Shown here: piece after piece, positions 391 to 16,935 of the stretch
Position numbering within the stretch: position 1 is the stretch's first letter
How the letters are laid out: each line of letters begins with the position of its first letter
Virus record (IMG/VR): IMGVR_UViG_3300043786_000977
Location: 144,909-208,908 of that record
Strand: one strand, 5' to 3'
Length of the DNA: 64,000 nt
The notes under the pieces: model-generated
The model's input: only the letters and a program-made list of their open reading frames with translations
The model's database searches: none
Told to the model about the DNA's origin: nothing
Position numbers and translations under genes: made by a program

Positions 391-396
391 GTTGTT

Positions 397-3135: not shown

Positions 3136-3202
3136 CACAATAGGTTAGTGCTGTAGTCCCATAAACTACGGGTTCTCAGTTCGAGTCTGAGCGAGCCCAC
3201 CA
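3126..3202 (+). tRNA. tRNA(CAT), elongator Met or Ile2, with atypical C33
   Basis: Acceptor GGGCTCG/CGAGCCC (paired 1:72, so not fMet); GTAGT-CCCATAA-ACTAC; CCA. Confidence 0.85.
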
Positions 3203-3219
3203 ATTAACGGGAGAATACA

Positions 3220-3507: not shown

Positions 3508-3606
3508 TACAGCAAAGCCAGTTGATTACACAACGGGTCAACTGGTATACGAATAACCGTTGCAAAACCACAAGCCGGTGACAAAACGGCTGGGACGACA
3601 TGACAG

Positions 3607-4359
3607 ATGAAAGATAAATTAGAAGAACAACCGAGTTTGAAGACGCTTACCGGGCGCACACTGATGCTCGTCGACACGCTGCAGGCGACAGTGAAGGCAC
3701 TCAACGAGTTCAGTACACGGGTGATGGCCACGCTGGTTCTCGGCGCGGAACAGGCTGATTCTGAGATCGAGGCCCTAGTTGACCTTGGTTCGATAGGTAA
3801 ACTCTATACGCAACTGCTGGAGGAACTGGATACGCTGCAGCTCGAAGAGTGCTGTAAGCAGGAGGTTATTACGGCTGCGTCGCACATGTGTAAGATACCT
3901 GATCCTGGTAGCGTAGGTACAGGTGTCGCACGGGCCTTGTTCCGTGGTAACCCGCGGAGCCGGCGATATGCTGTGGCGTTGAATCGACTCTTAGTCGCCG
4001 CACATGATCGGCAGCTACCGAATGCGGAACCAGCACCAGCAAAAGCACAGGCGCCTGCCGCTGCACCCGCGGTGCCAGCAAAAGCATCAGTGCCTGCAGC
4101 TAAACCCGCAGCGCCAGTGAGTAAGGCAGCCGGAGCAGATAAAGCTTCAACACCTAAGGCTTCTGTCTTGGCACGTCTGAAAGAAATCAAGATGGCCGGC
4201 CGCCGGACGAAGGGTGCGTTGACGCTGATTGTCACGGACCTAGAGGACAAAAAGCCCGTCACCGATAAGCAACGGAAGTATCTCACAGAGTGTGCGAGTA
4301 AGATGGTTGAACTTGCACCGTTGAAGACCGAACTTGTACGTCTTGCGCAGGCGACGTGA
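3607..4359 (+). CDS. Hypothetical protein with Ala/Pro/Lys-rich linker
   Basis: 250-aa ORF between genes on the coding strand. Confidence 0.65.
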   Translation: MKDKLEEQPSLKTLTGRTLMLVDTLQATVKALNEFSTRVMATLVLGAEQADSEIEALVDLGSIGKLYTQLLEELDTLQLEECCKQEVITAASHMCKIPDPGSVGTGVARALFRGNPRSRRYAVALNRLLVAAHDRQLPNAEPAPAKAQAPAAAPAVPAKASVPAAKPAAPVSKAAGADKASTPKASVLARLKEIKMAGRRTKGALTLIVTDLEDKKPVTDKQRKYLTECASKMVELAPLKTELVRLAQAT

Positions 4360-4435
4360 ACTGTGGTACCCTGACCCTCTGCCGTAGTTGGGTCAGGGTC
4401 CAACTAATACCAGTTAATCCTTCAGGAGTATTCGT

Positions 4436-6355
4436 ATGTCTACCCTTCCTTCGCTTTATTCGCAGTTTATTCATGTATCGCGGTATGCCAAATGGCAAGA
4501 TTCCGTTATGCGGCGTGAAACATGGGATGAGACTGTTACTCGATATCTTGACTTCATGTGTGAAGAACAATGTTCGGGTAAGATAGATGCAACGACGAAG
4601 AGTGAATTAAGAGATGCTATCGGCTCGTTGGCTGTGATGCCTTCTATGCGGTGCATGATGACAGCAGGCAAGGCACTGGCCAGGGATAACGCGGCTGGCT
4701 TCAACTGCAGTGCTGTGGTGATTGATAATCCCGTAGCCTTCGACGAAATGATGTACCTATTGATGTGTGGCGTTGGTGTGGGTTTCAGCGTCGAGCGCCA
4801 GTTCATCAATCAGCTACCTAACGTACCAGCGCTGCGTCGTTCCAAGACCGTAATCAAGGTCGAGGATTCGCGTATTGGTTGGTCCAATGCATTCCGTGAA
4901 CTGTTGAGCATGTTGTACTCCGGCCGGATCCCCGAATGGGATACGAGTGAGGTACGACCAGCCGGTGCACGTTTGAAGACCTTTGGTGGACGAGCTTCTG
5001 GCCCGGCCCCATTGGAAGACCTGTTTCGCTTCTGTATCGGCATATTCCGTGGTGCCGAGGGTCGCAAGCTGAATTCGCTGGAGTGCCATGACATATGCTG
5101 CAAGATCGGCGAAGTGATTGTCATGGGCGGTGTCCGGCGTTCGGCAGAGATCAGTCTGACGAATCCGTCTGATGATCGTATGCGTTACGCTAAGTCAGGT
5201 AATTGGTATGAGACTGCACCGTGGCGGCGCCAAGCCAACATATCGGCAGTGTATACCGAGAAGCCGGGTATGGATGTGTTTTTCCGAGAGTGGCTGGCAC
5301 TCTATGAGTCCAAGTCAGGAGAACGCGGGATCTTCAATCGTGAAGCTGCCCAGGTGCATATGGCCAAGTGCGGGCGACGGGATAACACACACGACTTCAT
5401 CGTTAATCCCTGTGGTGAGATCCTCCTGCGTTCGGGACAGATGTGTAACCTGTCCGAGGCAGTTGTACGTAAGGATGACAATGCGAAGACCTTGAAAGAG
5501 AAGGTGCGCCTTGCAACAATCCTAGGTACCCTGCAGGCTACCCTGACTAACTTCCGGTATCTCCGGCCACACTGGCAGGATAACACACGGGACGAAGCAT
5601 TACTTGGTGTGAGCCTGACAGGTGTCATGGATAACGCGCTGATGTCGGGGCAGAAGGGTAAGACGGAATTGGCAGGTACGTTGGAGGATCTGCGTAAGTC
5701 AGCAGTCCACGTCAATAAGCAGTGGGCTAAGACGCTTGGAATTAATCCAGCTACTGCCATCACAACCAATAAGCCCTCGGGTACTGTCAGTCAGTTGGTT
5801 GACTGCGCCAGTGGGTTGCACCCACGGTTCAGTGAGCATTATATCCGTACGGTACGTGGCGACATGCACGATCCTGTGACGAAGTTGATGCAGGCCTCAG
5901 GGTTTCCGCATGAACCTGATGTAACGAAACCCGATCATACTGTGGTCTTCAGTTTCCCGATAAAGGCGCCTGAGGGTTGTGAAACTGTGGCCGATGTGGA
6001 TGCGATCGCCCAGTTGGAACTCTGGCGTACCTACCAGGAACACTGGTGTGAACACAAGCCGTCCATGACTGTCTATGTAAAGGAACATCAGTGGATGGAA
6101 GTCGGTGCCTGGGTCTATAAGCACTTCGATGTGATCAGCGGTGTTACATTCCTGCCTGCATCGGATCACTGCTACGCTCAAGCCCCTTATCAGGACATAT
6201 CTGCGAAGGAGTATGAAGCACGCGTGGCTAAGATGCCCACGTCTGTGGATTGGGCGCAATTAGCCCAATACGAGAAGGACGACTCTTCCGTGAACACACG
6301 CGAATATGCTTGCAGCGGTGATAGTTGTGAGACCGTTGATTTGACTTCGAAATGA
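4436..6355 (+). CDS. nrdJ: Class II (adenosylcobalamin-dependent) ribonucleotide reductase
   Basis: PSMR, AGFNC, GGVRRSA, NPCGEI thiyl-radical motif, TTNKPSGTVSQL, C-terminal CSGDSC; no small subunit nearby. Confidence 0.93.
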   Translation: MSTLPSLYSQFIHVSRYAKWQDSVMRRETWDETVTRYLDFMCEEQCSGKIDATTKSELRDAIGSLAVMPSMRCMMTAGKALARDNAAGFNCSAVVIDNPVAFDEMMYLLMCGVGVGFSVERQFINQLPNVPALRRSKTVIKVEDSRIGWSNAFRELLSMLYSGRIPEWDTSEVRPAGARLKTFGGRASGPAPLEDLFRFCIGIFRGAEGRKLNSLECHDICCKIGEVIVMGGVRRSAEISLTNPSDDRMRYAKSGNWYETAPWRRQANISAVYTEKPGMDVFFREWLALYESKSGERGIFNREAAQVHMAKCGRRDNTHDFIVNPCGEILLRSGQMCNLSEAVVRKDDNAKTLKEKVRLATILGTLQATLTNFRYLRPHWQDNTRDEALLGVSLTGVMDNALMSGQKGKTELAGTLEDLRKSAVHVNKQWAKTLGINPATAITTNKPSGTVSQLVDCASGLHPRFSEHYIRTVRGDMHDPVTKLMQASGFPHEPDVTKPDHTVVFSFPIKAPEGCETVADVDAIAQLELWRTYQEHWCEHKPSMTVYVKEHQWMEVGAWVYKHFDVISGVTFLPASDHCYAQAPYQDISAKEYEARVAKMPTSVDWAQLAQYEKDDSSVNTREYACSGDSCETVDLTSK

Positions 6356-6364
6356 TACCCTTGA

Positions 6365-6416
6365 GGCAGAGTCAGTAATATTGGTTATTGACTCTGCCGT
6401 TCTTTATATCTATAGT
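6365..6416 (+). promoter_or_regulatory. Hairpin after nrdJ overlapping a sigma70-like promoter for the HNH gene
   Basis: GGCAGAGTCA/TGACTCTGCC 10-bp stem; TTGACT-17nt-TATAGT. Confidence 0.55.
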
Positions 6417-6482
6417 AAGCGCCATGAATAGGAAAAAACCTAGTTGTGTCTGTGCTTACTGCGGCGAGTCATCTGATCGACG

Positions 6483-7115
6483 ATGAAGAGTGGCAAACTT
6501 ACAATGGTAGAGGCCGGGCGATTGGGGCAGGCGAAATCGCGTGTTACGCAAGCTGCGCAGAAGATAGCGCGTATTCAGGCATATGATGCGCTGGGTAAAG
6601 GTTGTTTGCATTGTGGGACTAAGATACCGTATGTACGCCGGGACACGAAGTTTTGTAACCAGTCATGCGCGGCAAGTTATAATAACCGAGGGGTAAGGCG
6701 CCATGGAAACGCGCCTGCCGTTTGTAAGCAGTGCGCTAAACCGTTGGCGAAAAGTAAGAGGGAGTACTGTTCGGCAGGTTGCCATAAAAACCACATCTGG
6801 GTACAGACCAGGTTATTGATAGAAAAGCGCGGGGACGTTGCCATAAACAAGGTGGCCAATTCCAAATCGGCGCGTCGATATTTACGTGAAACACGTGGCG
6901 CGTGTTGCGCAGTCTGTCGCACAACCGAGTGGTGCGGGCGGGAAGTACCGTTAGTACTCGACCATATTGACGGGAATGCAGATAACTGGTTGCTCGGTAA
7001 CCTGCGCCTTATTTGCGGGAATTGTGATATGCAGACAGCGACTTATAAAGGGAAAAACCGTGGGCATGGGCGATTTGCGCGTCGGCAGCGGTATCACGAT
7101 GGGAAGAGTTTTTAG
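6483..7115 (+). CDS. Free-standing HNH endonuclease
   Basis: LVLDHIDGNADNWLLGNLRLICGNCD; upstream FCNQSC and YCSAGC Zn modules. Confidence 0.9.
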   Translation: MKSGKLTMVEAGRLGQAKSRVTQAAQKIARIQAYDALGKGCLHCGTKIPYVRRDTKFCNQSCAASYNNRGVRRHGNAPAVCKQCAKPLAKSKREYCSAGCHKNHIWVQTRLLIEKRGDVAINKVANSKSARRYLRETRGACCAVCRTTEWCGREVPLVLDHIDGNADNWLLGNLRLICGNCDMQTATYKGKNRGHGRFARRQRYHDGKSF

Positions 7116-7116
7116 T

Positions 7117-7192
7117 GCTCCTGTAGCTCAATTGGTAGAGCGGCTCACCTGTAATGAGCGGGTTGGGGATTCAATTTCCTCCGGGAGCTCCA
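7117..7192 (+). tRNA. trnT: tRNA-Thr(TGT) with atypical C33 and A53:U61
   Basis: Acceptor GCTCCTG/CGGGAGC, GCTCA-CCTGTAA-TGAGC, T-arm GGGGA-TTCAATT-TCCTC, CCA. Confidence 0.88.
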
Positions 7193-7207
7193 ATACGAAA
7201 GATTAAG

Positions 7208-7510
7208 ATGACACAGGATGACGAATTCACGTTAGTCTGCGAGGCCGGTGATACGGATGGCAGACCGGCCGAGACGAAGTTGTTGAGCCGCAGTGGCAAA
7301 GTGTATAAGGTGCTGGCTGCGACTGTACCTAGTATGTTTCGTCGTCTGAGTCCGGAAGACGAACGTGAGTTCATCGCATGGGCACGGAGCCACGCAGATC
7401 ATGAGATCCGTGCGATCTACCATCCAGTTATCCAGAATGAAATGTTTTTGATACGACAGAACCGCGCCTCTTTACAAGGACAAACTCATGGGAACGATAA
7501 CGCTGAATAG
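7208..7510 (+). CDS. Hypothetical protein
   Basis: ATG just after tRNA-Thr (the ORF-track start overlaps the tRNA). Confidence 0.55.
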   Translation: MTQDDEFTLVCEAGDTDGRPAETKLLSRSGKVYKVLAATVPSMFRRLSPEDEREFIAWARSHADHEIRAIYHPVIQNEMFLIRQNRASLQGQTHGNDNAE

Positions 7511-7655
7511 CAAGGGATCACGGAACCGTGTACGCAACCGCGACCAGTACCGTAAGAATTTCGACGATATAGACTGGAAGACCAAAGCACCAGTCAGCGG
7601 TAATGATTTGACTTCTGAAGCCGAACAACGTAACATGAAAAGGAAAACTAAATGA
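7488..7655 (+). CDS. Small basic hypothetical protein (55 aa, not in ORF track)
   Basis: MGTITLNSKGSRNRVRNRDQYRKNFDDIDW...; SD AAGGA; ATGA overlap with the next gene. Confidence 0.5.
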   Translation: MGTITLNSKGSRNRVRNRDQYRKNFDDIDWKTKAPVSGNDLTSEAEQRNMKRKTK

Positions 7656-7936
7656 GCACGATCGCGTTGGCTGTTATCTGTGGGTTGATCGGGTACGTAG
7701 TGGCTGTGGCCACATGCCTGTGGTTAGGACAGCGGTTATACTGGTTTCGGTCACCGGTGACGCTGTGGTCCCTTAACATGACATTCACCAATGATAATGG
7801 GCATGTGGCGGCCGGCGCCCACGGAATCGGTGGCTCGACGCATATTGTGTTCATGGACGAGCATAGTCGGACTTGCCTTGTGCCGATCGAGGAAGCCGAG
7901 AACGATCCGTTGATGTTCAAGTACATAGCAGGGTAG
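7652..7936 (+). CDS. Hypothetical membrane protein
   Basis: Hydrophobic N-terminal helix. Confidence 0.6.
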   Translation: MSTIALAVICGLIGYVVAVATCLWLGQRLYWFRSPVTLWSLNMTFTNDNGHVAAGAHGIGGSTHIVFMDEHSRTCLVPIEEAENDPLMFKYIAG

Positions 7937-7943
7937 GTGACAT

Positions 7944-8402
7944 ATGAGCCAGATAGTGCGTGCACGATATCAAGTAGAGGTTTTGTGTGTAGATGCCGTG
8001 GGTGTCATGAAGAACCGTTGCATTAAAGCCACGGCTTCTGGTATCTTGACTGTGCTGGCCACTGATGCCGTATTCGTGGTAGGTACGGGGTCACTCGTGG
8101 CACAGTTGGAATTGACTGCCCTTAGAGATCCGGACGGTGCGGATATACTGAATAAGGTACCCGCTGACAAACGGAAGACAGAGAGTAGCACGTATATGAT
8201 CAAGGATCAGGTACTAACACTCGATACATCGATCATGGACGGTGCAGTAGATCTCGCTATTAGTGTTCGGCTTGGAACCAAGGGTGAGACCCTGGATGAT
8301 GGTAAGGTAACTTGTACCATCAACAAATGGCTGTGGAAACTCATGTTGAAGAGTGCGACCGCTACCTTTACAGGGACGTGCAAGGAATTTATGGGGGCAT
8401 AG
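7944..8402 (+). CDS. Hypothetical protein
   Basis: 152-aa ORF; stop lies within the 5' end of tRNA-Ala. Confidence 0.6.
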   Translation: MSQIVRARYQVEVLCVDAVGVMKNRCIKATASGILTVLATDAVFVVGTGSLVAQLELTALRDPDGADILNKVPADKRKTESSTYMIKDQVLTLDTSIMDGAVDLAISVRLGTKGETLDDGKVTCTINKWLWKLMLKSATATFTGTCKEFMGA

Positions 8403-8468
8403 CTCAACTGGTAGAGCGCCAGCTTTGCAAGCTGGATGTTGCGAGTTCGACTCTCGCTGCTTCCACCA
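8393..8468 (+). tRNA. trnA: tRNA-Ala(TGC)
   Basis: GGGGGCA/TGCTTCC with G3:U70, CCAGC-TTTGCAA-GCTGG, CCA. Confidence 0.95.
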
Positions 8469-8474
8469 ATCTCT

Positions 8475-8562
8475 TGAGGGGTATGCCAAACGGCTGAAGG
8501 CAGCGGACTGTAAATCCGTGACGTAAGATACACTGGAGGTTCAAATCCTCTCCCCTCAACCA
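8475..8562 (+). tRNA. trnY: tRNA-Tyr(GTA)
   Basis: TGAGGGG/CCCCTCA, GCGGA-CTGTAAA-TCCGT, long variable arm, CCA. Confidence 0.93.
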
Positions 8563-8576
8563 ATCAAAGGAACAAA

Positions 8577-8810
8577 ATGAACTCGAAATTACAAATCACG
8601 CTATGTGTGTTGGCTTGTGGTGCCTATGTACTCATAACGGCTCTGGCCAGCGCCATGCTGATGAGTGCACGCAGTAATCGTGCGCTGCGTTCGGCTACGC
8701 AGACGTGCAGTCTGACTATCAGTAACCTCACGGTACGCGCTGCCGAGCATGAATACGTGTTGCGCGCATTGGTTCAGTTAGAGGCCCAGCGTGAGGTACA
8801 GAAGCAATGA
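8577..8810 (+). CDS. Hypothetical membrane-anchored protein
   Basis: N-terminal hydrophobic helix, SD AAAGGA. Confidence 0.55.
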   Translation: MNSKLQITLCVLACGAYVLITALASAMLMSARSNRALRSATQTCSLTISNLTVRAAEHEYVLRALVQLEAQREVQKQ

Positions 8811-9322
8811 TTAAGGCGATAGACATATATTCACGGATGGAAGTAAAGCGTCTTGTGCAGTCTGCATCTATTGTTCCTGTAACGCCGCTACCTTTTACTT
8901 GGCATCTGATTTCGGTATACACGGAGCCCCACGCAGAAATGTTGGTACCCGAATCCGTTATTCGTTTGAAACAGCTGGGTTTAGACGAGTCGCTGTCACT
9001 CCGGTTCAGCGATATTACAGACGTGGCCGATTATGAGCGCCGCAAGGAAGAGTATCCCAGTTATGTGAACCTGTTCGACACGACTCATGCCCAACAGGTT
9101 GTAGATTTCCTGCTGCGCATTCAAGCACGGCCCGGACCCGAAGTATTGTTCGTGCATTGCGACGCCGGCATATCGCGCTCGGGCGCAATAGGTACCTTTG
9201 CACGTCAGTTGTTCAATCTGGATATTGAAAAGTTTCTTCGACGCAACTCACAGATTCTGCCTAACGAGTATGTGCTTAAGTTGTTACATGCGGAGTTGGA
9301 CTCACGAGGCGGTGCAGTATGA
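8807..9322 (+). CDS. Protein-tyrosine/dual-specificity (CX5R) phosphatase family protein
   Basis: VHCDAGISRSGA P-loop; LRFSDI acid loop; PN motif near C-terminus. Confidence 0.85.
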   Translation: MIKAIDIYSRMEVKRLVQSASIVPVTPLPFTWHLISVYTEPHAEMLVPESVIRLKQLGLDESLSLRFSDITDVADYERRKEEYPSYVNLFDTTHAQQVVDFLLRIQARPGPEVLFVHCDAGISRSGAIGTFARQLFNLDIEKFLRRNSQILPNEYVLKLLHAELDSRGGAV

Positions 9323-9451
9323 GTAGCGGTTACGGCACCGGCCTTGAAGGTCTGGTTGTGATGGCATTCGTTGGTGTGACGCTCGGCGTGTGGAAGATCG
9401 TTGATATCATTATCTGGATCTGTCGTCATGTGCATGTGAGTTTCTAATTAC

Positions 9452-9527
9452 TCCAGGATAGCTCAGTTGGTAGAGCGCCTGACTGTTAATCAGGTGGTCG
9501 CAGGTTCGAGTCCTGCTCCTGGAGCCA
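9452..9527 (+). tRNA. trnN: tRNA-Asn(GTT)
   Basis: TCCAGGA/TCCTGGA, CCTGA-CTGTTAA-TCAGG, CCA. Confidence 0.95.
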
Positions 9528-9535
9528 ATCAATCT

Positions 9536-9612
9536 GCATCGGTGGTCGAGTGGTTTAAGGCAGCGGTCTGCAAAACCGCTTTTCACAGGTTCGAACCCTG
9601 TCCGGTGCTCCA
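9536..9612 (+). tRNA. trnC: tRNA-Cys(GCA)
   Basis: GCATCGG/CCGGTGC, U73 discriminator, GCGGT-CTGCAAA-ACCGC, CCA. Confidence 0.93.
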
Positions 9613-9827
9613 TTATGAGAAACGTGAAATGCCATGGTTGTAATGCACAACTGACAGTCGAGAAGCGTGCCTACCCTAGTCACTACTACTGTACAGCGCG
9701 CTGTCATGCCCCCGCATGTAAGTTACGCCAGTTCGAACAATTCGCTGGACAGCAATTACGCCGCGGATGGTGTTATAACGGTACTCGAATAGTTCGCATA
9801 ACATGATGTTGAACGACTCAATTTAAC

Positions 9828-9902
9828 GGCGGTTATTGTTTAGTGGTAGAACGACAGATTGTGGATCTGTCCGCACGAGTTCGATTCTCGTTAACCGCCC
9901 CA
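9828..9902 (+). tRNA. trnH: tRNA-His(GTG)
   Basis: 8-bp acceptor with encoded G-1 (GGCGGTTA/TAACCGCC), ACAGA-TTGTGGA-TCTGT, CCA. Confidence 0.93.
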
Positions 9903-9935
9903 CCTGCCTTTCCCTCTTTAATACTTCGTGATACT

Positions 9936-10904
9936 ATGTACGTACAAATAACAACCAAATGCAATTTCGCCTGCGACCATTGTATGTTCTCGTGCCGACC
10001 CGGCAAGGGTCAACACATGACCATGGATACCGTGCGGGCAACTGCGCGGTTCATTAGGTGGCAGGGTAACGAACACTTCTTTATCGGCGGCGGTGAACCA
10101 ACCCTCCATCCCAAGTTCTGGGATGTCGTCGATATCGTTAAGGACTGCAACGCTGACTGGGCAGAAGAGAATGGCTGCCCGCCTGTTCAGTTGGTTACGA
10201 ACGGCAGCAAGACCAAGACAGTGATGCGTCTGGTAGAGATGGCTGATAAAGACGAAGCCTCCGTGCGTTTGAGTCGTGATCAGTTTCATCTCAAGTACCC
10301 GATCGACCCGAGCGTCATCGCAGCTTTTCCGAAGCATTCGCACTTGTCTATCGGTTCGTACATCCATAACGTAGTGAACACGGGCCGAGCCCAGCGTTCC
10401 GTTTGGGCTGCAAATCCACGACCCGGTTGTGACGCCTGTGGACCTGTCGTTACACCTAACGGAAAGATCTGGCGTTGCACTTGCCGTCAGGAATGCATCG
10501 GTGATGTGTTCCGTGGTTACGACTGCGACTCAGAGTTGATCGACTACGACAGCGCAATCGGTTGTACTATCAGGGACGGTAAACTGGTCCGTGACCCCCG
10601 TAGCAATCTCTTAAGGCACAGGCACGAAATGGAAGCAGAAGGTTGGATCTTCAATCCAAACGTGTTTGAAGGCCAACTCGAATTTGATCTTAACAGCGAA
10701 CTATTCAAGGATACGCACCATGGGACGAATAACAGCACTAGGACTGCAGGATCCAATCCTGAAGTTAACGTTGACGGAACAAATACGGATGCATCTGCAG
10801 GGGAACCATTACCCGCCGGTGTCCAAGGTGTTCGTGCCGCTTTGCGTGAAGGCAATACGATTTGCGAACCGGGGAGCGGGGGAACACAAGTTGCGATTGC
10901 CTGA
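9936..10904 (+). CDS. Radical SAM protein
   Basis: CNFACDHC (CxxxCxxC), GGGEPTLHP, VTNG, C-terminal SPASM/twitch-like Cys; start at MYVQ. Confidence 0.88.
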   Translation: MYVQITTKCNFACDHCMFSCRPGKGQHMTMDTVRATARFIRWQGNEHFFIGGGEPTLHPKFWDVVDIVKDCNADWAEENGCPPVQLVTNGSKTKTVMRLVEMADKDEASVRLSRDQFHLKYPIDPSVIAAFPKHSHLSIGSYIHNVVNTGRAQRSVWAANPRPGCDACGPVVTPNGKIWRCTCRQECIGDVFRGYDCDSELIDYDSAIGCTIRDGKLVRDPRSNLLRHRHEMEAEGWIFNPNVFEGQLEFDLNSELFKDTHHGTNNSTRTAGSNPEVNVDGTNTDASAGEPLPAGVQGVRAALREGNTICEPGSGGTQVAIA

Positions 10905-10998
10905 GGGCTATAAGACGCGTGACGGCAAGCGACTTACTACAGTGAGTCATGTGATCGAGGTATATCACTTAGACTCGTGGCTGAAGGAGGCAGAATGA
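10720..10998 (+). CDS. Hypothetical phage protein (HLQGNHYPPV motif)
   Basis: SD AAGGA before ATG; protein-like composition; overlaps the radical SAM tail. Confidence 0.65.
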   Translation: MGRITALGLQDPILKLTLTEQIRMHLQGNHYPPVSKVFVPLCVKAIRFANRGAGEHKLRLPEGYKTRDGKRLTTVSHVIEVYHLDSWLKEAE

Positions 10999-11351
10999 CA
11001 CACGAACAATGGATGGAACTAACGACCGAAGAACAGAGGTTCAAGGTGGCTGAATCGTTGGGGCTTGCACCTTTCTACTGCGGGGATGGAACCATGGGTA
11101 GTCGTCCACCGGATTTACTCTATCGGGCGAGCCACGACGAATTGAAGCCAGTTCCCAATTTCCTTGCTGACCTCAACGCCATGCATGCGTGTATGTTAAT
11201 GGTACGGAATAGGCGTTTGTTCGCAAATTATTACAGGCATCTGCGAGATGTGTTTGCGCAACGCCGCTTGGATTTCAGTACTTGGGACGAACATAACACG
11301 AGTGCAGAGATCCGCGCAGAGGCCTTTGTAATGACCATGGAGGAGCAATGA
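10995..11351 (+). CDS. Hypothetical phage protein
   Basis: SD AAGGAGG; PNFLADLNAMH motif. Confidence 0.6.
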   Translation: MTHEQWMELTTEEQRFKVAESLGLAPFYCGDGTMGSRPPDLLYRASHDELKPVPNFLADLNAMHACMLMVRNRRLFANYYRHLRDVFAQRRLDFSTWDEHNTSAEIRAEAFVMTMEEQ

Positions 11352-11485
11352 CGAAGCGTGGAATGCAGGAAAAAGGGAAGAAGGGTCAGCTGTGCATTAA
11401 GTGTGGCAAGGAGCGCGCTTCACGTACGGGCATGGGTGGCCGGTTACTCTGCAACAAGTGTTTCACAAAAGAATGTGGACTATAA
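11348..11485 (+). CDS. Small Zn-finger protein (45 aa, not in ORF track)
   Basis: SD GGAGG; CIKC...CNKC. Confidence 0.5.
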   Translation: MTKRGMQEKGKKGQLCIKCGKERASRTGMGGRLLCNKCFTKECGL

Positions 11486-11486
11486 C

Positions 11487-12263
11487 ATGATATATCCAAA
11501 TGACATTGTACCTGTCGAGGTACAGCAGGAGATCGGGCCGCCGTATGACTGGTGTGTCCTGTCAGGTTACACAGGCAGTCACGCGTACGGTACCTATGTC
11601 CCGCCTGAACACGAGTTCGGTACGGATGACGTAGACATAATGGGTGTGATGATCCCGCCGGTTGAGTATTACCTGGGGTTCCGCAAGATGGATCACTGTC
11701 TCTACCAGAAGGGTAAGTGGGATATCCTGCTTTACGAGTTCAGACATTTCGTTAGTCTGTTACTCAAGGGTAATCCAAACGTCATCGGTATGCTCTGGTT
11801 ACGACCTGAGGACTACCTGATCAGAAGTCCAGCGATGGATGAACTAATTGCCAATCGACATCTGTTCTGCGGGAAGCATGTCTTCGACTCATTTCGTGGT
11901 TATGCCTCAGGCCAATTATATAAGATGCAGCATGCTGTACGTGAAGGGTACATGGGCGAGAAGCGGCGTAAACTCGTTGAGCGTTTCGGGTACGACGTAA
12001 AGAATGCTGCGCATATGATTCGGCTACTGCGTATGGGCCAGGAGTTCCTCAAGACTGGCACGTTACAGGTGTATCGTACAGACGACGCACAGCAGCTGAT
12101 CGAGATCAAGACAGGGCTGTGGCCGTTGGATCGTGTGATGGACTTGGCGCATGCTGAGTTTGATTGGTTGGATGCTGCCTATGCAGCAAGCACATTACCT
12201 GAGAAACCGCAAACAGCGGAAGTTGAAGCAAGGGTGATTAGCATACTGAAAGGTCGTATATGA
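11487..12263 (+). CDS. Nucleotidyltransferase (DNA pol beta superfamily, YcgL/Nuc-transf-like)
   Basis: GSHAYG...DDVDIMGV; KGNPN; YDVKNAAHMIRLL. Confidence 0.85.
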   Translation: MIYPNDIVPVEVQQEIGPPYDWCVLSGYTGSHAYGTYVPPEHEFGTDDVDIMGVMIPPVEYYLGFRKMDHCLYQKGKWDILLYEFRHFVSLLLKGNPNVIGMLWLRPEDYLIRSPAMDELIANRHLFCGKHVFDSFRGYASGQLYKMQHAVREGYMGEKRRKLVERFGYDVKNAAHMIRLLRMGQEFLKTGTLQVYRTDDAQQLIEIKTGLWPLDRVMDLAHAEFDWLDAAYAASTLPEKPQTAEVEARVISILKGRI

Positions 12264-12666: not shown

Positions 12667-13755
12667 ATGGATCAAGGTCTTAGTCAGGTTGCTATACAGG
12701 GAATCATTCGCCGTAAGATAGGAGATTGGCTGGAGTCGATTGACAACATGGAGTTGCGGCTCTTCCTGTCTGATAAAATCATCGTTACGGGCGGCGCGAT
12801 CGCATCGTTGCTTCGCGGGGAGAAGGTGAACGATTACGATGTCTACTTCACAACGCGGGAAGCAGCCACACGCGTAGCCAGTTATTACTTGGCACGTTTC
12901 GCAGCGAATCCGCCAAAGAGTATGCAGCAGTCACCCGTACGTATGTACGTGGATGATAAGTCAGATCCCGACCGTGTACGTATTGTTATCCAGTCGGCCG
13001 GTGTGATATCTACCGACGGTGATGGCGGCAAGTACGAGTACTTCGAAACGACACCGCCCGCGAATGCCGCAGATTACGTTGCTGACGTGGTAGCCCCGGT
13101 CGTGGATGAAGACGAACAGCGGCTTACCAACGAACTCAGGGACTCGACTACGGATGCCGGTATACCCGACAGTGATAATCCCGAGCTCATGCGCCTCGTC
13201 GAACAGGCAGCCACTGAGGACCTGCCGCCGATGGCGACAGGTCCAGGGGCCAAGGCAAAGAACAGGTATCGGCCGATCTTCCTGTCCGGTAATGCCATCA
13301 CCTTGAGCGACGAGATTCAGCTCATCATCAGGTTCTATGGCCCCGCGGAGGAACTCCACAAGAACTTCGATTTCGTCCACTGCACGAACTACTGGCAGTC
13401 AGAGATGCGTGTCGGCGCGAAGTTCGGGGGTACCCTGGTGGTAAACACGCCAGCCCTTATGAGCCTGATGTCCAAACGTCTGGGGTATATCGGTAGCCGG
13501 TATCCGTTATGCAGTTTGATCCGGACCCGTAAGTTCGTCCGGCGCGGTTGGACGGCGCCGGCCGGTGTGTTCATCAAGGCGATGCACCAGTGCCTGGCCC
13601 TGGACTGGAATAAAATCGAAACCTGGAGAGAACAGTTGACCGGGGTGGATACCGCCTACTTTGCTGAAATCATCGAGATCCTCAAGCGGGATCAGGCAGC
13701 AGGGAAGTCCATAGACTCGGCATACGTCGTTGCCTTAATCGATAGGTTAATTTAA
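12667..13755 (+). CDS. Poly(A) polymerase/CCA-enzyme head-like nucleotidyltransferase
   Basis: VTGGAIASLL...NDYDVYF (GG...DxD) and FDFVH motifs. Confidence 0.7.
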   Translation: MDQGLSQVAIQGIIRRKIGDWLESIDNMELRLFLSDKIIVTGGAIASLLRGEKVNDYDVYFTTREAATRVASYYLARFAANPPKSMQQSPVRMYVDDKSDPDRVRIVIQSAGVISTDGDGGKYEYFETTPPANAADYVADVVAPVVDEDEQRLTNELRDSTTDAGIPDSDNPELMRLVEQAATEDLPPMATGPGAKAKNRYRPIFLSGNAITLSDEIQLIIRFYGPAEELHKNFDFVHCTNYWQSEMRVGAKFGGTLVVNTPALMSLMSKRLGYIGSRYPLCSLIRTRKFVRRGWTAPAGVFIKAMHQCLALDWNKIETWREQLTGVDTAYFAEIIEILKRDQAAGKSIDSAYVVALIDRLI

Positions 13756-13786
13756 CGCGTCTTCGCGTTATAACATATTGTTTAAG

Positions 13787-14348
13787 GATAGCGTTAGCAT
13801 CCTGATGACCAGGGGTATAACCCCTTCATTTCAGGACCAGTGCACCCTGACAGGCAGGTTTCGAGCTGACCCCATGCGGCGGCCGAGTAGCTGTAGCCGT
13901 GGCGGTGCACTGGTCTCTGATCTGACACCAACCCCTTCCCCGAGGCTGTACACATTCAGTTTGACCCCTATACGGGGCTCGGGGAGTCCTCGCCCGGTTG
14001 GCCCGCAGGGGCTTACCACAATATGTGGAGCCGGGTTACTTTCCTAGGTGAGCGACTGATGGGAACCGCATCTTCCTGTATCGTGCGTGTTCCTGATCGG
14101 CAGTCGCTCACTCCCGGTTACCGCGGGGTTCGTCTCATACGTACTCCTCCCCGCGGGTAACCGGGCTCCTTCTCTTCCTCCCTGCCCCTCAGGGGTTTGA
14201 CCACAATACGTGGGTGGGAGACGCTATTACACCGATGATCCCACGATCAAGCGACACCGTCGTGGGGGAGGTTGGGCCATTAGTTGGGCGGTCGATTGGT
14301 AGCGTTAACTGACCTCGACGCTGCTTAAAGTCACGGACCGTGAGGTCA
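13787..14348 (+). ncRNA. Large multi-stem structured non-coding element (family unassigned)
   Basis: Perfect 12-bp (13835-46/13904-15) and 11-bp (14048-58/14101-11) stems, 16-bp stem (14113-28/14149-65), long-range closing stem, 3' pseudoknot; G-U pairs favour the + strand. Confidence 0.65.
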
Positions 14349-14379
14349 TTCTTTCCCTCTGTCAACGCTGTAAAAGGTG

Positions 14380-14409
14380 TTGACAAGGGTTCATGCCCTG
14401 TGTTTTAAT
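14380..14409 (+). promoter_or_regulatory. Sigma70-like promoter upstream of the small-RNA array
   Basis: TTGACA-18nt-TTTAAT with upstream TG; the -35 sits in a hairpin TGTCAAC..GTTGACA. Confidence 0.5.
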
Positions 14410-14455
14410 ACACACGTTTACCCACTATAGGGCACCGATCTTTCATATTTTAACA

Positions 14456-14596
14456 TGCGGATAGTAGGAGTCAGGCAGCAGCATAAACTACAGGACCTAG
14501 ATGTCGTTGGTTCAAGTCCAACACCCTGCGCCAATACAGTTGCAGGGTTAGCTCAGTTGGTAGAGCACCAGGAAAAAACTGATTCTGTAATCCGCA
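14456..14596 (+). ncRNA. YrlA-like Y RNA (permuted tRNA mimic)
   Basis: T-arm GTTGG-TTCAAGT-CCAAC precedes a loop-closed acceptor (ACCCTGC-GCCA..GCAGGGT) and D-arm GCTC-AGTTGGTA-GAGC; 5' and 3' ends pair (TGCGGAT/ATCCGCA); lies upstream of the Ro-like gene. Confidence 0.75.
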
Positions 14597-14614
14597 CCAT
14601 CTTCGAGGTTGTTA

Positions 14615-15363
14615 AGAGTGGCACAGCAAAAACTCGTCCTCACGGACATTGCTTTCCCAGCAAACCAGAGTCCACTCTGTATTTTTCATTTTAGCTTCGG
14701 ACTGTAGAATTCGTACAGCAAACAACTACCTCCTGCATAAGGAGGTTTTCGCCCTCATATGCGAAAACTATATCGAATTCGTAGTCCTCTTTTTCTCATC
14801 GTTCGTAAGGATAGCGCAGCAATCAATCGCCCTTCGGGGCACTAGCCTGTTAAGCTAACCACAGTCTATCCTGTGACCTTTCATTTTCGTACACTCTGTG
14901 ACTTCAGCAACTATCGTAGGGATAGCGCAGCAATCAACCGCCCTTCGGGGCACTAGTTATTGGAACTAACCATAGCCTATCCCGTGACTTTTCACTTTTC
15001 AACGCACTCTGTGACTTAAGCGAGCACCGTAGGAATGAGTCGGCAGTCGGCCCTTAACCGGGCGCTACTTCGTCCGAAAGGATGCATGAAAAACTGTGGT
15101 ACCGGGCACATATGTGTTAACGGGCCACGCGGTGTGATCATTGATTACGCACACTGATATAATAAAAGGTAATCCGTTGCGCACGAGTCGTTATCTTGGG
15201 CGGTCCCGCCGAGGGACTTAAATAACCGTGCAAGTATTCTGTGGTGCTAGCTTATCTGTTCTTGTTAAGGATGACGCAGCAAATATCACCCCGCAAGGGG
15301 CGATGGGTTCGATTCCCATAGAGCCCGTTAGGGCTTTGTCAATGGCGACAAATAAGTCATCCT
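14615..15363 (+). ncRNA. Array of six CAGCAA-marked stem-closed small-RNA units (putative Y-like RNAs)
   Basis: Units at 14615-78, 14699-787, 14808-72, 14919-83, 15032-240, 15268-363. Each has a 5' stem strand, then CAGCAA (CGGCAG in unit 15032), internal hairpins, a 3' stem strand, then GT and a U-rich tail. Confidence 0.65.
14804..15020 (+). repeat. Diverged ~111-nt tandem duplication of two RNA units
   Basis: CGTARGGATAGCGCAGCAATCAAYCGCCCTTCGGGGCACTAG... repeated with compensatory substitutions. Confidence 0.9.
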
Positions 15364-15379
15364 GTACTTTGTTATGTAA

Positions 15380-15413
15380 GGCCTCGTCCGAGTGGACGGG
15401 GCCTTTGCCTTTT
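15380..15413 (+). terminator. Terminator-like hairpin between the RNA array and the Ro-like gene
   Basis: GGCCTCGTCC-GAGT-GGACGGGGCC followed by TTTGCCTTTT. Confidence 0.5.
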
Positions 15414-15441
15414 GTAGACGACAACAATAAGGAGACGATGA

Positions 15442-16935
15442 ATGCGTAAGACAACGTCAATGATCAGAGGTCACAATTCAGATCCCTTGCACGCGCACAG
15501 CGGGGATCATCACCTGGAGTTCTTCTCGAAGGCGGGTTCGCTCTTCGTGAAGGGCAAGGGTAAGAAAGGCGCCAGCTACTACGGTACCAGTTCCGAGACG
15601 ACAGCCCTGTCACTCTTCCAGCCCATGTGGATGTCGCCAGGCCTGGAGAACAAGACACTGGCCATGCAGTTGCTGTTCTGGTTACGTGATCCCCGCGGTG
15701 GCGCCGGCAATCGGTCGGGTTTCCGGGAAATCGTGCGCTGGTTGGCGCAGCAGCCTGAGACGTCGGTTGATCCGTCGGGTGCCACTTGGCTGGGTGTCAA
15801 CCTGTTGCGGGTTCCGGAATGGGGACGCTGGGACGATCTGGCAGAACTGTACGGTACGTCACTCGAGCCGCTTGTCGCGGGCGTCTGGACAGAAGCGATC
15901 ATGCGGAAGGAGCACCTGGCTTGTAAGTGGGCCAAGGTTGATATGGTACCGCTGCAGCGCGCCCTGAAAATCAATGAGCGTGGGTTGCGGATGTTGATCG
16001 TACCGCCCCGTGCCACGATCGTTGAGCGTGCTATGTGCGCGGGTGACTGGACTGCCGTGGACTACTCGAAGATTCCGAGTAAGGCGATGTCCATGTACAC
16101 GAAGGCGTTCCGGATGCACGACAAGCCCCGGTTCGACGAGTACAAGGCGGCACTGGTGCGTGGGGATAAAGGCGTGAAGATTAACGCTAGTGTGTTGTTC
16201 CCGCACGACTGTGTGAAGCAGGCGAAGACTGGTGATCAGATCATCGCTGAAGCGCAGTTTAAAGCGTTGCCCGATTTCATCGGTGGCACGGATCGGCGTA
16301 TCATCGTGTTGGCTGACCGGTCTGGTTCGATGGGTGCTATAGCGCAGGATACGATTACGAACGATAATGTGGCTGTGGCCTTGGCGCTGTATTGCAGCGA
16401 TCGGCTGGGTCCGCAGAATCCGTTCTATCGGCAGTATCTGGAATTCCAGAGTACACCGTTCTGGGTGGATTGGAAAAACGAGACGTTTGTGCAAGCCTGT
16501 CGGTCCGGTCAAGGATTCGCGGGTAGCACGAACTTACAAGGGGCGCTTGACGCTATATTGAAGCAGGGCAAAGCTTGGAGAGTCCCTCCGGCACAGATGC
16601 CTACGATGCTTCTGATCGTCAGCGATATGCAGTTCGATAACCACGTTACTGGGGGAACCCGGATGATAGCCTGTCACGGAACTGAACAGACTGTGGTTGA
16701 GAAATGTATGCAACAGTGGGAAGCTGCTGGTTATCAGCGGCCGACTATTGTTTTCTGGAATCTTGCAGGCTACGCAGGGCAACCTGCGCAAGCACAGACA
16801 CCGAACACTGCCCTTGTGTCCGGTTTCTCACCTGCCATACTGAAATCCATACTGTCTGGTAAAGAAGTTTTACCCCGAGAGGTCATGCTCCGGGCAATAG
16901 CTAAATATCAGGTAGAGGTCCCCTGCGTGGGGTAA
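15442..16935 (+). CDS. Ro60/TROVE-related RNA-binding protein (DUF2828-type, C-terminal vWA)
   Basis: LFWLRDPRGGAG, RWDDL, ACKW, DYSKIPSKAM, INASVLFPHD, vWA LADRSGSM, STNLQ, IVSDMQFD, IVFWNL, LVSGFSP. Confidence 0.85.
   Translation: MRKTTSMIRGHNSDPLHAHSGDHHLEFFSKAGSLFVKGKGKKGASYYGTSSETTALSLFQPMWMSPGLENKTLAMQLLFWLRDPRGGAGNRSGFREIVRWLAQQPETSVDPSGATWLGVNLLRVPEWGRWDDLAELYGTSLEPLVAGVWTEAIMRKEHLACKWAKVDMVPLQRALKINERGLRMLIVPPRATIVERAMCAGDWTAVDYSKIPSKAMSMYTKAFRMHDKPRFDEYKAALVRGDKGVKINASVLFPHDCVKQAKTGDQIIAEAQFKALPDFIGGTDRRIIVLADRSGSMGAIAQDTITNDNVAVALALYCSDRLGPQNPFYRQYLEFQSTPFWVDWKNETFVQACRSGQGFAGSTNLQGALDAILKQGKAWRVPPAQMPTMLLIVSDMQFDNHVTGGTRMIACHGTEQTVVEKCMQQWEAAGYQRPTIVFWNLAGYAGQPAQAQTPNTALVSGFSPAILKSILSGKEVLPREVMLRAIAKYQVEVPCVG

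What the first reader, a model, noticed from the sequence alone, without database searches (positions are those of the whole stretch)
14615..15363. Array of CAGCAA-marked small RNAs with covarying scaffolds and swappable anticodon-like loops (possible decoy cassette)
Seen: six stem-closed units share a 5' stem followed by CAGCAA (CGGCAG in one) and a 3' stem followed by GT and a U-tail. The duplicated units 14808 and 14919 show compensatory changes: AGGATAG/CTATCCT becomes GGGATAG/CTATCCC, and TAGC/GCTA becomes TAGT/ACTA. The enclosed 7-nt loop is replaced wholesale: CT-GTT-AA (identical to this phage's tRNA-Asn loop) versus TA-TTG-GA. Unit 14699 carries ACCTCC-TG-CAT-AA-GGAGGT (CAU loop). Unit 15268 carries a T-arm (ATGGG-TTCGATT-CCCAT), an acceptor-like stem and a D-like loop. 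Inference: a constant protein-binding scaffold displays variable tRNA-mimic modules, for example as decoys for host anticodon nucleases or as adaptors for the Ro-like ring. I know of no named family for this arrangement.
Basis: partly seen in the sequence, partly recalled or inferred. Interest (0 to 1): 0.88.

Follow-up and report, generated by a model that had tools for sequence, protein, structure and literature searches.

The report
Phage Y-RNA-like array displaying tRNA mimics
Just upstream of a phage gene for a Ro60-shaped RNA-binding protein lies an array of seven small RNAs that share one conserved "handle" but each display a different look-alike of part of a tRNA; the same kind of RNA sits beside this protein family in many unrelated phages and appears not to have been described.

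Summary
Window 14464-15365 (+) holds seven units, not six. Each has a 7-bp closing helix, two bases, CAGCAA (CAGCAG/CGGCAG in two), a variable module, the complementary strand and GU. A strict pattern finds six copies in 128 kb of both strands, all here.

The adjacent ORF (15442-16935, DUF2828+DUF7788) is predicted to fold like Ro60. The units are therefore Y-RNA-like partners, a known kind, but they lack the canonical GNCGAA site and fall below every Rfam threshold.

The same scaffold sits next to DUF2828 genes in metagenomic loci and in isolates (Listeria AG20, Felix-O1-like EC6, Campylobacter NCTC12673, mycobacteriophage LeBron): 247 units on the gene strand versus 20 opposite.

Modules are tRNA parts: T/D/acceptor elbows (U0, U6), anticodon-arm mimics with loop C-U-NNN-A-A (53 versus 0.45 expected), and near-complete tRNAs. 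Orthologous or duplicated units differ mainly in the anticodon loop.

Protein binding and a decoy or adaptor function remain untested. A Felixounavirus Ro60-like protein, probably of this family, is a reported counter-defence factor. I rate it a new variant of a known kind.

The parts
14362..14417 (+). Promoter-like region with a conserved palindrome (GTCAAC ... GGTGTTGAC; TTGACA as a -35-like hexamer) 5' of the array
   Evidence: Conserved in the relatives L082 and L162. The consensus promoter scan did not call it because the -10-like hexamer is TTTAAT. Function is inferred.
14464..14588 (+). Unit U0: GUA, closing stem GGAGUCA(G), CAGCAG, then T-arm, acceptor-like stem-loop and D-arm, then UGAUUCU-GU. 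An outer helix GCGGAU/AUCCGC lies beyond it. YrlA-type module.
   Evidence: Rfam YrlA 32.8 bits, E 8e-5, below the gathering score of 69. Strict scan hit. Constrained fold. Compensatory change against L082.
14612..14680 (+). Unit U1: UUA, AGAGUGG, CA, CAGCAA, two small hairpins, CCACUCU, GU
   Evidence: 35 bits. Orthologues in L082 and L162 keep the stem through G-C to U-A changes.
14699..14787 (+). Unit U2 with outer helix GGACU/AGUCC: GUA, GAAUUCG, UA, CAGCAA, hairpin ACCUCC-UGCAUAA-GGAGGU, second hairpin, CGAAUUC, GU
   Evidence: Fold z = -6.2. Strict scan. CM hit of 28.6 bits although not in the training set.
14805..14874 (+). Unit U3: GUA, AGGAUAG, CG, CAGCAA, UUCG-tetraloop hairpin, anticodon-arm mimic UAGC-CUGUUAA-GCUA (loop identical to the tRNA-Asn loop), CUAUCCU, GU
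14916..14985 (+). Unit U4, tandem duplicate of U3: GGGAUAG/CUAUCCC stem, arm UAGU-UAUUGGA-ACUA
   Evidence: 89% identical to U3 with its spacer. Two compensatory pairs; loop changed at 5 of 7 positions.
15029..15242 (+). Unit U5, long (about 214 nt): GUA, GGAAUGA, GU, CGGCAG, about 190-nt module of unknown kind, GUAUUCU, GU. Outer helix AGCACC/GGUGCU.
   Evidence: one mismatch, two G-U. Long units at the same array position in L162, L168 and L169 conserve only the closing helix.
15265..15365 (+). Unit U6: UUA, AGGAUGA, CG, CAGCAA, GCAA-tetraloop hairpin, T-arm AUGGG-UUCGAUU-CCCAU, acceptor-like hairpin, D-like hairpin, UCAUCCU, GU
   Evidence: z = -4.6; 26.4 bits, not in training set
15378..15415 (+). 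Intrinsic-terminator-like hairpin and U-rich tail between the array and the Ro-like gene
   Evidence: 12 pairs, 8 G-C. An equivalent hairpin is seen in L162 and L082.
15442..16935 (+). Ro60-fold protein gene (497 aa; DUF2828 + DUF7788; vWA/MIDAS DxSxS at residues 292-296)
   Evidence: Pfam. PHROG 850 'RNA-binding protein'. AlphaFold model pLDDT 84, pTM 0.85. The top nine Foldseek PDB hits are all Ro60/Rsr. The MIDAS residues are invariant in the alignment.

Best explanation
The array is a set of seven Y-RNA-like small RNAs, the likely partners of the Ro60-fold protein encoded immediately downstream.

Each RNA has two parts:
- A constant handle: the helix formed by its 5' and 3' ends, plus the adjoining A-rich junction that carries CAGCAA on the 5' strand and a G (usually GU) after the 3' strand. 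I infer that this is the docking site for the Ro-like ring protein. It would play the role that the GNCGAA-bearing helix plays for canonical Ro60.
- A cassette that copies part of a tRNA. This is a T-arm/acceptor/D-arm elbow in U0 and U6, and an anticodon arm in U3 and U4. In related phages it can be a nearly whole tRNA.

The array is probably transcribed from its own promoter, ends at the hairpin before the Ro-like gene, and is cut in the pyrimidine-rich spacers.

The most likely function is counter-defence by tRNA mimicry. The RNPs would offer look-alikes of anticodon loops and tRNA elbows to host factors that recognise tRNAs, above all anticodon nucleases. That would occupy or divert those factors while the phage's own tRNA genes and repair enzymes keep translation going. 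Swapping loops by duplication and recombination would retarget a unit.

Shown here: the family exists, its helix is kept while its sequence varies, it co-occurs with the DUF2828 gene on the same strand, and its modules are tRNA-like.

Inferred: protein binding (about 0.7), a role in conflict over tRNAs (about 0.6), and decoy rather than adaptor (about 0.4).
For: Specificity:
- Strict motif: 6 hits of 6 inside the array in 128 kb.
- The CM finds only the array in the window.

Link to the gene:
- Across 169 loci found through the protein, 247 units lie on the gene strand against 20 opposite; 189 are upstream, most within 500 nt.
- 51% of upstream CAGCAA sites have the closing helix + GU, against 2-3% inside genes or on the other strand.
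- In the reverse direction, a DNA-only pattern found 61 stretches in the viral and genome collections. 26 of them hold a DUF2828 gene, always on the same strand.
- Close relatives carry arrays of about 4 to 14 units.

Protein: predicted Ro60 fold.

Modules:
- U0 and a LeBron unit give sub-threshold YrlA matches.
- 32 T-loop hairpins and 23 CUNNNAA loops occur among 222 modules, with none in shuffles.
- 53 CUNNNAA against 0.45 expected, with 29 different triplets among the 68 anticodon-like loops, in 247 short modules.
- Three orthologous units hold tRNA-like bodies that are 91% identical. Their differences fall mostly in the anticodon loop and in the stretch after CAGCAA.
- The U3/U4 loop swap.

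Context:
- 10 tRNA genes, an RlaP repair nucleotidyltransferase and a Gad2-like gene lie upstream.
- Listeria phage AG20 has an RtcB-type ligase nearby.
- Units are interleaved with tRNA genes in EC6.

Literature:
- Ro60 with tRNA-like Y RNAs (PMC4201824).
- A phage Ro60 binds upstream Yrl RNAs and host PNPase (PMC12135203).
- Gp130 of the Felixounavirus Bas63 is Ro60-like, lies directly upstream of the tRNA stretch, and counters the ppl defence gene (PMC11482910; genus).
Against: No binding, expression or processing data exist for any CAGCAA unit.

The canonical Ro60 site (GNCGAAN0-1G) is absent, so docking on the ring is inferred from position alone.

The pairing count on alignment A2 is circular, because the units were selected for pairing.

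Many modules are plain tetraloop hairpins with no tRNA likeness. The 214-nt U5 module is unexplained.

U4's loop (UAUUGGA) and U2's loop (UGCAUAA) lack U33, so they are poor anticodon-loop copies.

35 of the 61 pattern hits showed no DUF2828 gene in the stretch fetched. At least two of those lie on contigs known from other calls to carry one. One identical 70-nt sequence seen in 5 stretches, next to an integrase in two of them and a transposase in a third, may be unrelated.

The only functional datum concerns ppl, an ATPase-PHP protein that the authors propose degrades DNA, not tRNA. I did not check by sequence that Bas63 gp130 belongs to the DUF2828 family.

The abundant Listeria-phage transcript is ROOL RNA, not these units.
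Confidence: 0.45

Rival explanations
1. Adaptor or repair platform rather than decoy. The units bind the Ro-like ring as above, but their tRNA-like cassettes recruit or gate enzymes that handle tRNAs (RtcB-type ligase, RlaP, CCA-adding enzyme, RNase P, PNPase). The RNP would then inspect, repair or degrade damaged tRNAs during infection, as proposed for Rsr-YrlA in the bacterial RtcBA operon.
For: - RlaP lies 3 kb upstream in the window.
- An RtcB-type ligase lies 1.2 kb downstream in Listeria phage AG20.
- Canonical Y RNAs tether Ro60 to PNPase, and M. smegmatis YrlA is processed by RNase P and receives CCA (PMC4201824).
- The phage phiLo Ro60-Yrl complex binds host PNPase (PMC12135203).
- TROVE proteins in jumbo phages are viewed as an RNA-repair platform with a tRNA-like partner (PMC7824862).
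- RlaP restores nucleotides lost from cut anticodon loops (bioRxiv 10.64898/2025.12.29.696909).
Against: An adaptor for one enzyme would not need many units with different anticodon triplets (29 triplets among the 68 anticodon-like loops), nor wholesale loop swaps. Repair enzymes are absent from many DUF2828 loci examined.
Confidence: 0.3
2. Cis-acting elements without a function in trans. They would be processing or stability punctuation of a tRNA-type polycistronic transcript, or binding sites through which the Ro-like protein controls its own gene.
For: Units lie directly 5' of the gene in most loci, are interleaved with tRNA genes in EC6, and are separated by pyrimidine-rich spacers.
Against: - A terminator-like hairpin separates the array from the gene.
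- Units also lie 3' of the gene in LeBron, EC6 and S13.
- Arrays of up to about 14 units with elaborate, diversifying modules are more than punctuation or an operator would need.
Confidence: 0.08
3. Decaying tRNA genes or a selfish repeat that happens to accumulate in tRNA regions.
For: Some modules are tRNA fragments. Unit number varies between close relatives, and L082 carries an apparent recombinant between two units.
Against: The handle (conserved A-U, G-C and U-A positions in the helix, invariant CAGCA, G after the helix) is kept across phages of Actinobacteria, Firmicutes, Proteobacteria and Campylobacter while the rest diverges. The strand and the neighbourhood of one protein family are also conserved.
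Confidence: 0.03

Closest known systems
Bacterial and phage Y RNAs of the YrlA type with Ro60/Rsr (Rfam RF02553; Chen et al. 2014, PMC4201824)
   Same: - Small RNAs encoded within a few kb of a Ro60-fold gene, on the same strand.
- The 5' and 3' ends pair into a helix carrying a conserved motif on the 5' strand.
- The variable part mimics tRNA (T-arm, acceptor-like stem, D-arm) in U0 and U6.
- Several Y RNAs occur per locus.
   Different: - The protein is DUF2828/DUF7788, not Pfam TROVE.
- The motif is CAGCAA in an A-rich junction, not GNCGAAN0-1G.
- No unit reaches the Rfam threshold (best 32.8 against 69 bits).
- There are about 4-14 units per array instead of 1-4.
- Many units carry an anticodon-arm mimic, the one tRNA part that YrlA is not described as mimicking.
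Thermus phage phiLo Ro60 with Yrl1/Yrl2 (PMC12135203)
   Same: A phage-encoded Ro60-fold protein with Y-like RNAs directly 5' of its gene. The proposed role is in escaping host defence.
   Different: phiLo's protein is a recognisable Ro60 homologue, and its two RNAs carry the CGAA motif. No tRNA-part cassettes or arrays were described.
Phage tRNA gene clusters that replace or outlast host tRNAs cut by anticodon nucleases (van den Berg et al. 2023, PMC10264068)
   Same: Same genomic neighbourhood and the same presumed conflict. Anticodon-loop sequence is the variable, selected feature.
   Different: Those are functional tRNAs. Most units here lack acceptor, D or T arms and cannot be charged. 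They are held in a foreign closing helix.
Bas63 gp130, a Ro60-like counter-defence protein of a Felixounavirus (PhageMaP preprint, PMC11482910)
   Same: Probably the same protein family. It is Ro60-like by structure, lies directly upstream of the tRNA stretch as in EC6, and Bas63 is a Felixounavirus. The authors speculated that some annotated tRNAs are Y RNAs.
   Different: No RNA partner was identified there. The defence countered (ppl) is not known to target tRNA. I did not confirm by sequence that gp130 is a DUF2828 protein.
ROOL and GOLLD large phage RNAs found near tRNA genes
   Same: Abundant structured non-coding RNAs in phage tRNA regions. ROOL lies about 1 kb upstream of the DUF2828 gene in Listeria phage AG20.
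   Different: They are unrelated in size, sequence and structure. None is present in this window.

Membership tests
Y RNA (Ro60-associated small RNA, general class) | Encoded close to, and on the same strand as, a Ro60-type protein gene | tested here: met
   The array ends 77 nt before ORF 15442-16935 on the same strand. The model of that protein matches only Ro60/Rsr at full length. At Pfam level the protein is DUF2828/DUF7788, not TROVE.
Y RNA (Ro60-associated small RNA, general class) | Helix formed by pairing of the 5' and 3' ends, enclosing a variable effector module | tested here: met
   Folds. Closing helices are kept through different sequences in orthologous units. The helix is present at 51% of upstream CAGCAA sites against 2-3% of control sites.
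Y RNA (Ro60-associated small RNA, general class) | Physically bound by the Ro60-type protein | not testable with these tools
   Needs immunoprecipitation or a gel-shift assay.
YrlA (Rfam RF02553) | Score at or above the family's gathering threshold (69 bits) | tested here: not met
   U0 scores 32.8 bits and the other units give no match. The LeBron unit scores 39.8 bits.
YrlA (Rfam RF02553) | GNCGAAN0-1G motif on the 5' strand of the Ro-binding helix | tested here: not met
   The motif does not occur in 14440-15380. CAGCAA takes its place.
YrlA (Rfam RF02553) | tRNA-like module: T-arm, acceptor-like stem-loop and D-arm in that order | tested here: met
   Met for U0 (alignment, fold) and in looser form for U6. 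Not met for U1-U5.
tRNA | Complete cloverleaf recognised by tRNA finders | tested here: not met
   ARAGORN and Rfam tRNA find nothing in 14440-15380. Three units in relatives do contain a near-complete tRNA.
DUF2828-associated CAGCAA units (family defined here) | A/U-rich 5' flank, 7-bp helix (A-U, G-C and U-A favoured at pairs 1, 2 and 5), 1-3 nt, CAGCAA, module, complementary strand, G(U) | tested here: met
   All seven units fit; U5 has a degenerate core and one mismatch. Consensus from 247 units and alignment A2. CM R1 hits.
DUF2828-associated CAGCAA units (family defined here) | Co-occurrence with a DUF2828 gene on the same strand | tested here: met

The most novel reading that the evidence does not exclude
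DUF2828 Ro-like proteins and their CAGCAA-handled RNAs form a widespread, RNA-based counter-immunity repertoire. Each unit of an array would present one anticodon-loop (or tRNA-elbow) look-alike that neutralises one host tRNA-directed nuclease. Phages would retarget units by swapping 7-nt loops through duplication and recombination. The arrays would then record which tRNAs the hosts attack.
Probability: 0.3. Interest if true: 0.9.

Novelty: new variant of a known kind. Interest (0 to 1): 0.8.

Why it matters
The DUF2828 'Ro-like RNA-binding protein' is annotated in 693 sequenced phage records. These include Felix-O1-like coliphages, P100/A511-like Listeria phages, Campylobacter phages and cluster-L mycobacteriophages. 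I found no report of an RNA partner for it.

This locus, with its relatives, supplies a candidate partner that has a simple searchable signature. It also suggests that a Ro-type ring has a second recognition code (CAGCAA rather than GNCGAA).

The finding extends tRNA mimicry by Y RNAs from the tRNA elbow to the anticodon arm, with a variable triplet. That makes one question directly testable: why do Ro-type RNPs and tRNA mimics sit in phage tRNA and repair regions, and do they blunt tRNA-targeting defences?

It also flags likely annotation gaps in phage tRNA regions, such as spurious small ORFs called over the arrays.

Tried and rejected
- Megablast and blastn of the array against 50,697 phage records: no near match. 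Only short tRNA-like similarity at the T-arm-to-D-arm junction of U0.
- Rfam at gathering and at permissive thresholds: nothing but the sub-threshold YrlA match on U0.
- Profile-sequence search of the protein against PDB sequences: Ro60 only at E = 0.65, which is inconclusive. The fold comparison settled it.
- The strict window-type pattern (2-nt gap) on 161 loci found only the window's own contig and L082. The distant loci use a 3-nt gap, seen once the 5' half-motif was searched alone.
- Contigs encoding P0003 had no DNA on file.
- Aligning the long unit U5 with its positional counterparts: no conserved interior, so its module stays unexplained.
- The pair counts on alignment A2 are not used as evidence of structure, because the sequences were chosen for pairing. 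One search is the non-circular substitute.
- I considered that the three 'highly transcribed non-coding regions' of Listeria phage CKA15 were the units. The one with published coordinates corresponds to ROOL RNA, so I claim no expression evidence. A near-consensus TTGACA-17-TATCAT promoter does precede the three AG20 units.
- CRISPR-like, retron-like and riboswitch readings were rejected. There are no identical repeats or spacers, no reverse transcriptase, and units occur on either side of the gene.
- Aeromonas phage Aeh1 showed no CAGCAA units and Vibrio phage phi-pp2 no convincing ones within 3 kb of their DUF2828 genes, so the association is not universal.
Full report
**1. What is in the sequence**

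Window 14440-15440 has no convincing ORF. It lies between a cluster of tRNA and RNA-metabolism genes and a 497-aa ORF at 15442-16935. Each has a 7-nt stem, two bases, CAGCAA (CGGCAG at 15041), a variable interior, the complementary 7-mer, GT and a pyrimidine-rich spacer.

Five units are preceded by GTA and two by TTA. U0, U2 and U5 also have an outer helix beyond the GUA/GU internal loop (read directly; table). Each unit folds with its ends paired. Fold z-scores run from -1.3 to -6.2.

**2. More than chance**

A strict pattern (perfect 7-bp helix, at most two G-U pairs, NN, CAGCA[AG], partner + GT within 40-260 nt) has six matches in the 64 kb on both strands. All six are in 14467-15365 on the + strand. 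U5 fits with one mismatch and two G-U pairs.

A covariance model built from 95 short units, 92 of them from other phages, hits only this array in the whole window. That includes U2 (28.6 bits) and U6 (26.4 bits), which were not in the training set.

**3. The neighbouring protein**

ORF 15442-16935 matches DUF2828 and DUF7788 and PHROG 850 'RNA-binding protein'. Homologues in cluster-L mycobacteriophages are annotated 'Ro-like RNA binding protein'.

Sequence profiles barely reach Ro60 (E = 0.65). An AlphaFold model (pLDDT 84, pTM 0.85) does better. Its nine best PDB matches are all Xenopus or human Ro60 or Deinococcus Rsr, aligned along the whole chain (probability 1.0, E 4e-7 to 5e-6, TM 0.45-0.60). 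vWA/MIDAS domains follow. The MIDAS DxSxS residues are invariant among 26 homologues. So the neighbour is a Ro60-fold protein of a family distinct from Pfam TROVE.

**4. Relatives**

The window comes from a 208.9-kb IMG/VR contig. No sequenced phage is close at the DNA level.

Metagenomic contigs whose DUF2828 protein is 54-93% identical carry the same arrangement 5' of the gene:
- 4 units in L082
- 5-6 in L162
- about 6 to 14 in L165, L167, L168 and L169

All have GUA, helix, NN, CAGCAA ... helix, GU. Helix sequences differ between orthologous units while pairing is kept. For example, U0 changes A-U to G-C against L082, and U1 changes G-C to U-A against L162. L082 carries what looks like a recombinant between a U3-type 5' half and a U6-type 3' half. 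Unit number therefore changes by recombination between handles.

Loci with only 33-47% identical proteins carry the same element with a 3-nt gap. Its consensus is (U/A)A-AGGAUGN-NUA-CAGCAA ... A-rich ... NCAUCCU-GU.

Over 169 loci (989 kb):
- 247 units are on the gene strand and 20 on the other.
- 189 lie upstream of the gene, most within 500 nt, and 28 downstream.

The pairing statistics on alignment A2 are circular, because the units were selected by pairing. The fair test is conditional. Of 396 CAGCAA sites upstream on the gene strand, 51% have the closing helix + GU. The figures are 3% inside the gene and 2% on the opposite strand.

In the reverse direction, a DNA pattern that uses no protein information was searched across the viral and genome collections. 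It gave 61 stretches. 26 of them contain a DUF2828 gene, always on the same strand as the unit. At least two of the others lie on contigs already known to carry the gene outside the stretch fetched.

Isolated phages have the units too:
- Listeria phage AG20: three units 70-340 nt upstream, behind a TTGACA-17-TATCAT promoter.
- Felix-O1-like EC6: at least four units downstream, interleaved with tRNA genes, with GG after the helix.
- Campylobacter phage NCTC12673: two units upstream, with GA after the helix.
- Mycobacteriophage LeBron: two or three units downstream of gp53.
- Cronobacter phage S13: one unit.

Aeh1 showed none and phi-pp2 none that was convincing.

**5. What the variable modules are**

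*Elbow type.* U0 contains a T-arm (GUUGG-UUCAAGU-CCAAC), an 8-bp acceptor-like stem-loop and a canonical D-arm, in YrlA order. It gives the only Rfam signal. U6 has a tetraloop hairpin, a T-arm, a 6-bp hairpin and a D-like hairpin. A LeBron unit scores 39.8 bits on YrlA.

*Anticodon-arm type.* U3 carries UAGC-CUGUUAA-GCUA. Its loop equals that of the window's tRNA-Asn.

Among 247 distinct short modules from all loci, 159 have a hairpin of at least 4 bp closing a 7-nt loop, against 65 in shuffles. The loop composition is that of anticodon loops:
- C 49% at position 32
- U 66% at position 33
- near-uniform at positions 34-36
- A 70% at position 37
- A 68% at position 38

53 loops are exactly CUNNNAA (0.45 expected), and the 68 anticodon-like loops carry 29 different triplets. 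The commonest are UUU, UCU, CAU, GAA, UGA and GUU. An MFE-based count gave the same picture and mostly 5-bp stems.

*Near-complete tRNAs.* One unit each in L165, L167 and L168 holds a tRNA called by ARAGORN and, in L168, by Rfam. These three orthologous units are 91% identical. Their differences fall mostly in the anticodon loop (ACGCAAA, CUUCCAA, AUUCAAA) and in the stretch just after CAGCAA.

The window's own duplicate pair U3/U4 behaves the same way. It is 89% identical overall, has two compensated helix changes, and differs at 5 of 7 loop positions against 5 of 58 elsewhere (p = 5.5e-4).

Not everything fits. U4's loop and U2's loop lack U33. U2's orthologue has a 6-nt loop. Many modules are plain tetraloop hairpins. 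The 190-nt interior of U5 is not conserved among its positional counterparts.

**6. How it most likely works**

Established knowledge covers four points:
- Ro60 rings bind Y RNAs through a helix formed by the RNA ends.
- Bacterial YrlA RNAs add a tRNA-like module. They are encoded beside rsr, often with RtcB repair genes (PMC4201824).
- A phage Ro60 binds two upstream Yrl RNAs and host PNPase (PMC12135203).
- TROVE proteins in jumbo phages are regarded as part of an RNA-repair platform with a tRNA-like partner (PMC7824862).

By position, strand, architecture and module content, the units here are the counterpart RNAs of the DUF2828 branch of Ro-like proteins. They have a different handle.

The context points to conflict over tRNAs:
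- Ten tRNA genes lie in 83-9902.
- RlaP is at 11358-12263. That enzyme family adds back nucleotides lost from cut anticodon loops (bioRxiv 10.64898/2025.12.29.696909).
- A Gad2-like gene lies upstream.
- In Listeria phage AG20 an RtcB-type ligase is nearby.

In the Felixounavirus Bas63, the Ro60-like gp130 sits directly upstream of the tRNA stretch. It was needed to overcome the ppl defence gene, and its authors guessed that some 'tRNAs' there are Y RNAs (PMC11482910; genus). In Listeria phage CKA15, the protein predicted by HHpred to resemble Rsr was found in virions (PMC12282133).

I therefore favour RNPs that present tRNA look-alikes to host tRNA-directed factors. The diversity and rapid replacement of anticodon triplets favours a decoy role over a single-enzyme adaptor role, but only weakly. 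Binding, expression, processing and function are all inferred.

**7. Comparison and novelty**

It works like a Y RNA / YrlA system. Two membership tests for YrlA itself fail: the Rfam threshold and the GNCGAA motif. A third, the tRNA-like module, is met only by U0 and U6. The protein is not a Pfam TROVE member.

New here are the CAGCAA handle, the array format, the anticodon-arm and whole-tRNA cassettes with swapped loops, and the breadth across phages of at least four bacterial phyla. I found no paper linking DUF2828 to an RNA and no Rfam family for the units. The literature library is incomplete, so earlier mention elsewhere cannot be excluded. Verdict: a real feature and a new variant of a known kind.

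Noticed in passing
It is the only part that any Rfam model touches (32.8 bits).
   Followed up: yes
window 12667-13755 (+): The 362-aa ORF upstream of the array matches PHROG 4400 (unknown function). ORFs of 362 aa (L162) and 406 aa (L169) in the same upstream position carry a precomputed Pfam Gad2 (anti-Gabija) hit, whereas my Pfam scan of the window protein found nothing.
   Followed up: partly
window 9843-12263 (+): A radical-SAM protein (9843-10904) and an RlaP-family RNA-repair nucleotidyltransferase (11358-12263) sit between the tRNA cluster and the array.
   Followed up: partly
window 13756-14340: About 600 nt lacks a convincing gene but has three perfect inverted repeats of 10-12 nt (13835/13904, 14048/14101, 14113/14156). 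The relatives L162 and L169 have 1.3-2.5 kb of gene-free sequence in the same place. This may be further structured RNA or terminators.
   Followed up: partly
window 14362-14386; L082 about 655-685; L162 about 1893-1920: A palindrome, GTCAAC ... GGTGTTGAC, overlaps a -35-like TTGACA and is conserved 5' of the array in three relatives. It looks like an operator on the array's promoter.
   Followed up: partly
L175 1449-2000 (Listeria phage AG20, record about 26193-26744): ROOL RNA (Rfam 90.1 bits, just under the gathering score of 99.1) lies about 1 kb upstream of the DUF2828 gene. Its coordinates match the region reported in the near-collinear phage CKA15, whose spurious ORFs draw up to 67% of phage transcripts and which that paper left unidentified.
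   Followed up: partly
L173 4737-4857 and 4867-4979 (Cronobacter phage S13): Two over-long annotated 'tRNAs' (121 and 113 nt, one labelled tRNA-OTHER) lie immediately before a CAGCAA unit (4995-5131) downstream of the DUF2828 gene. They may be tRNA-like cassettes rather than ordinary tRNAs.
   Followed up: no
L180, L184, L207, L212, L214: An identical 70-nt sequence matches the unit pattern. It lies near an integrase in L180 and L214 and a transposase in L212, with no DUF2828 gene in the stretch. It may be an unrelated element or a chance match counted five times.
   Followed up: partly
L162 2265-2555: A 96-aa ORF with a good ribosome-binding site is inserted in the middle of the unit array of a 73%-identity relative. 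It is absent from the window.
   Followed up: no
L169 1986-2058: ARAGORN calls a tRNA with an undetermined two-base 'anticodon' inside the array of a 54%-identity relative. It is probably another tRNA-like cassette with an altered loop.
   Followed up: no
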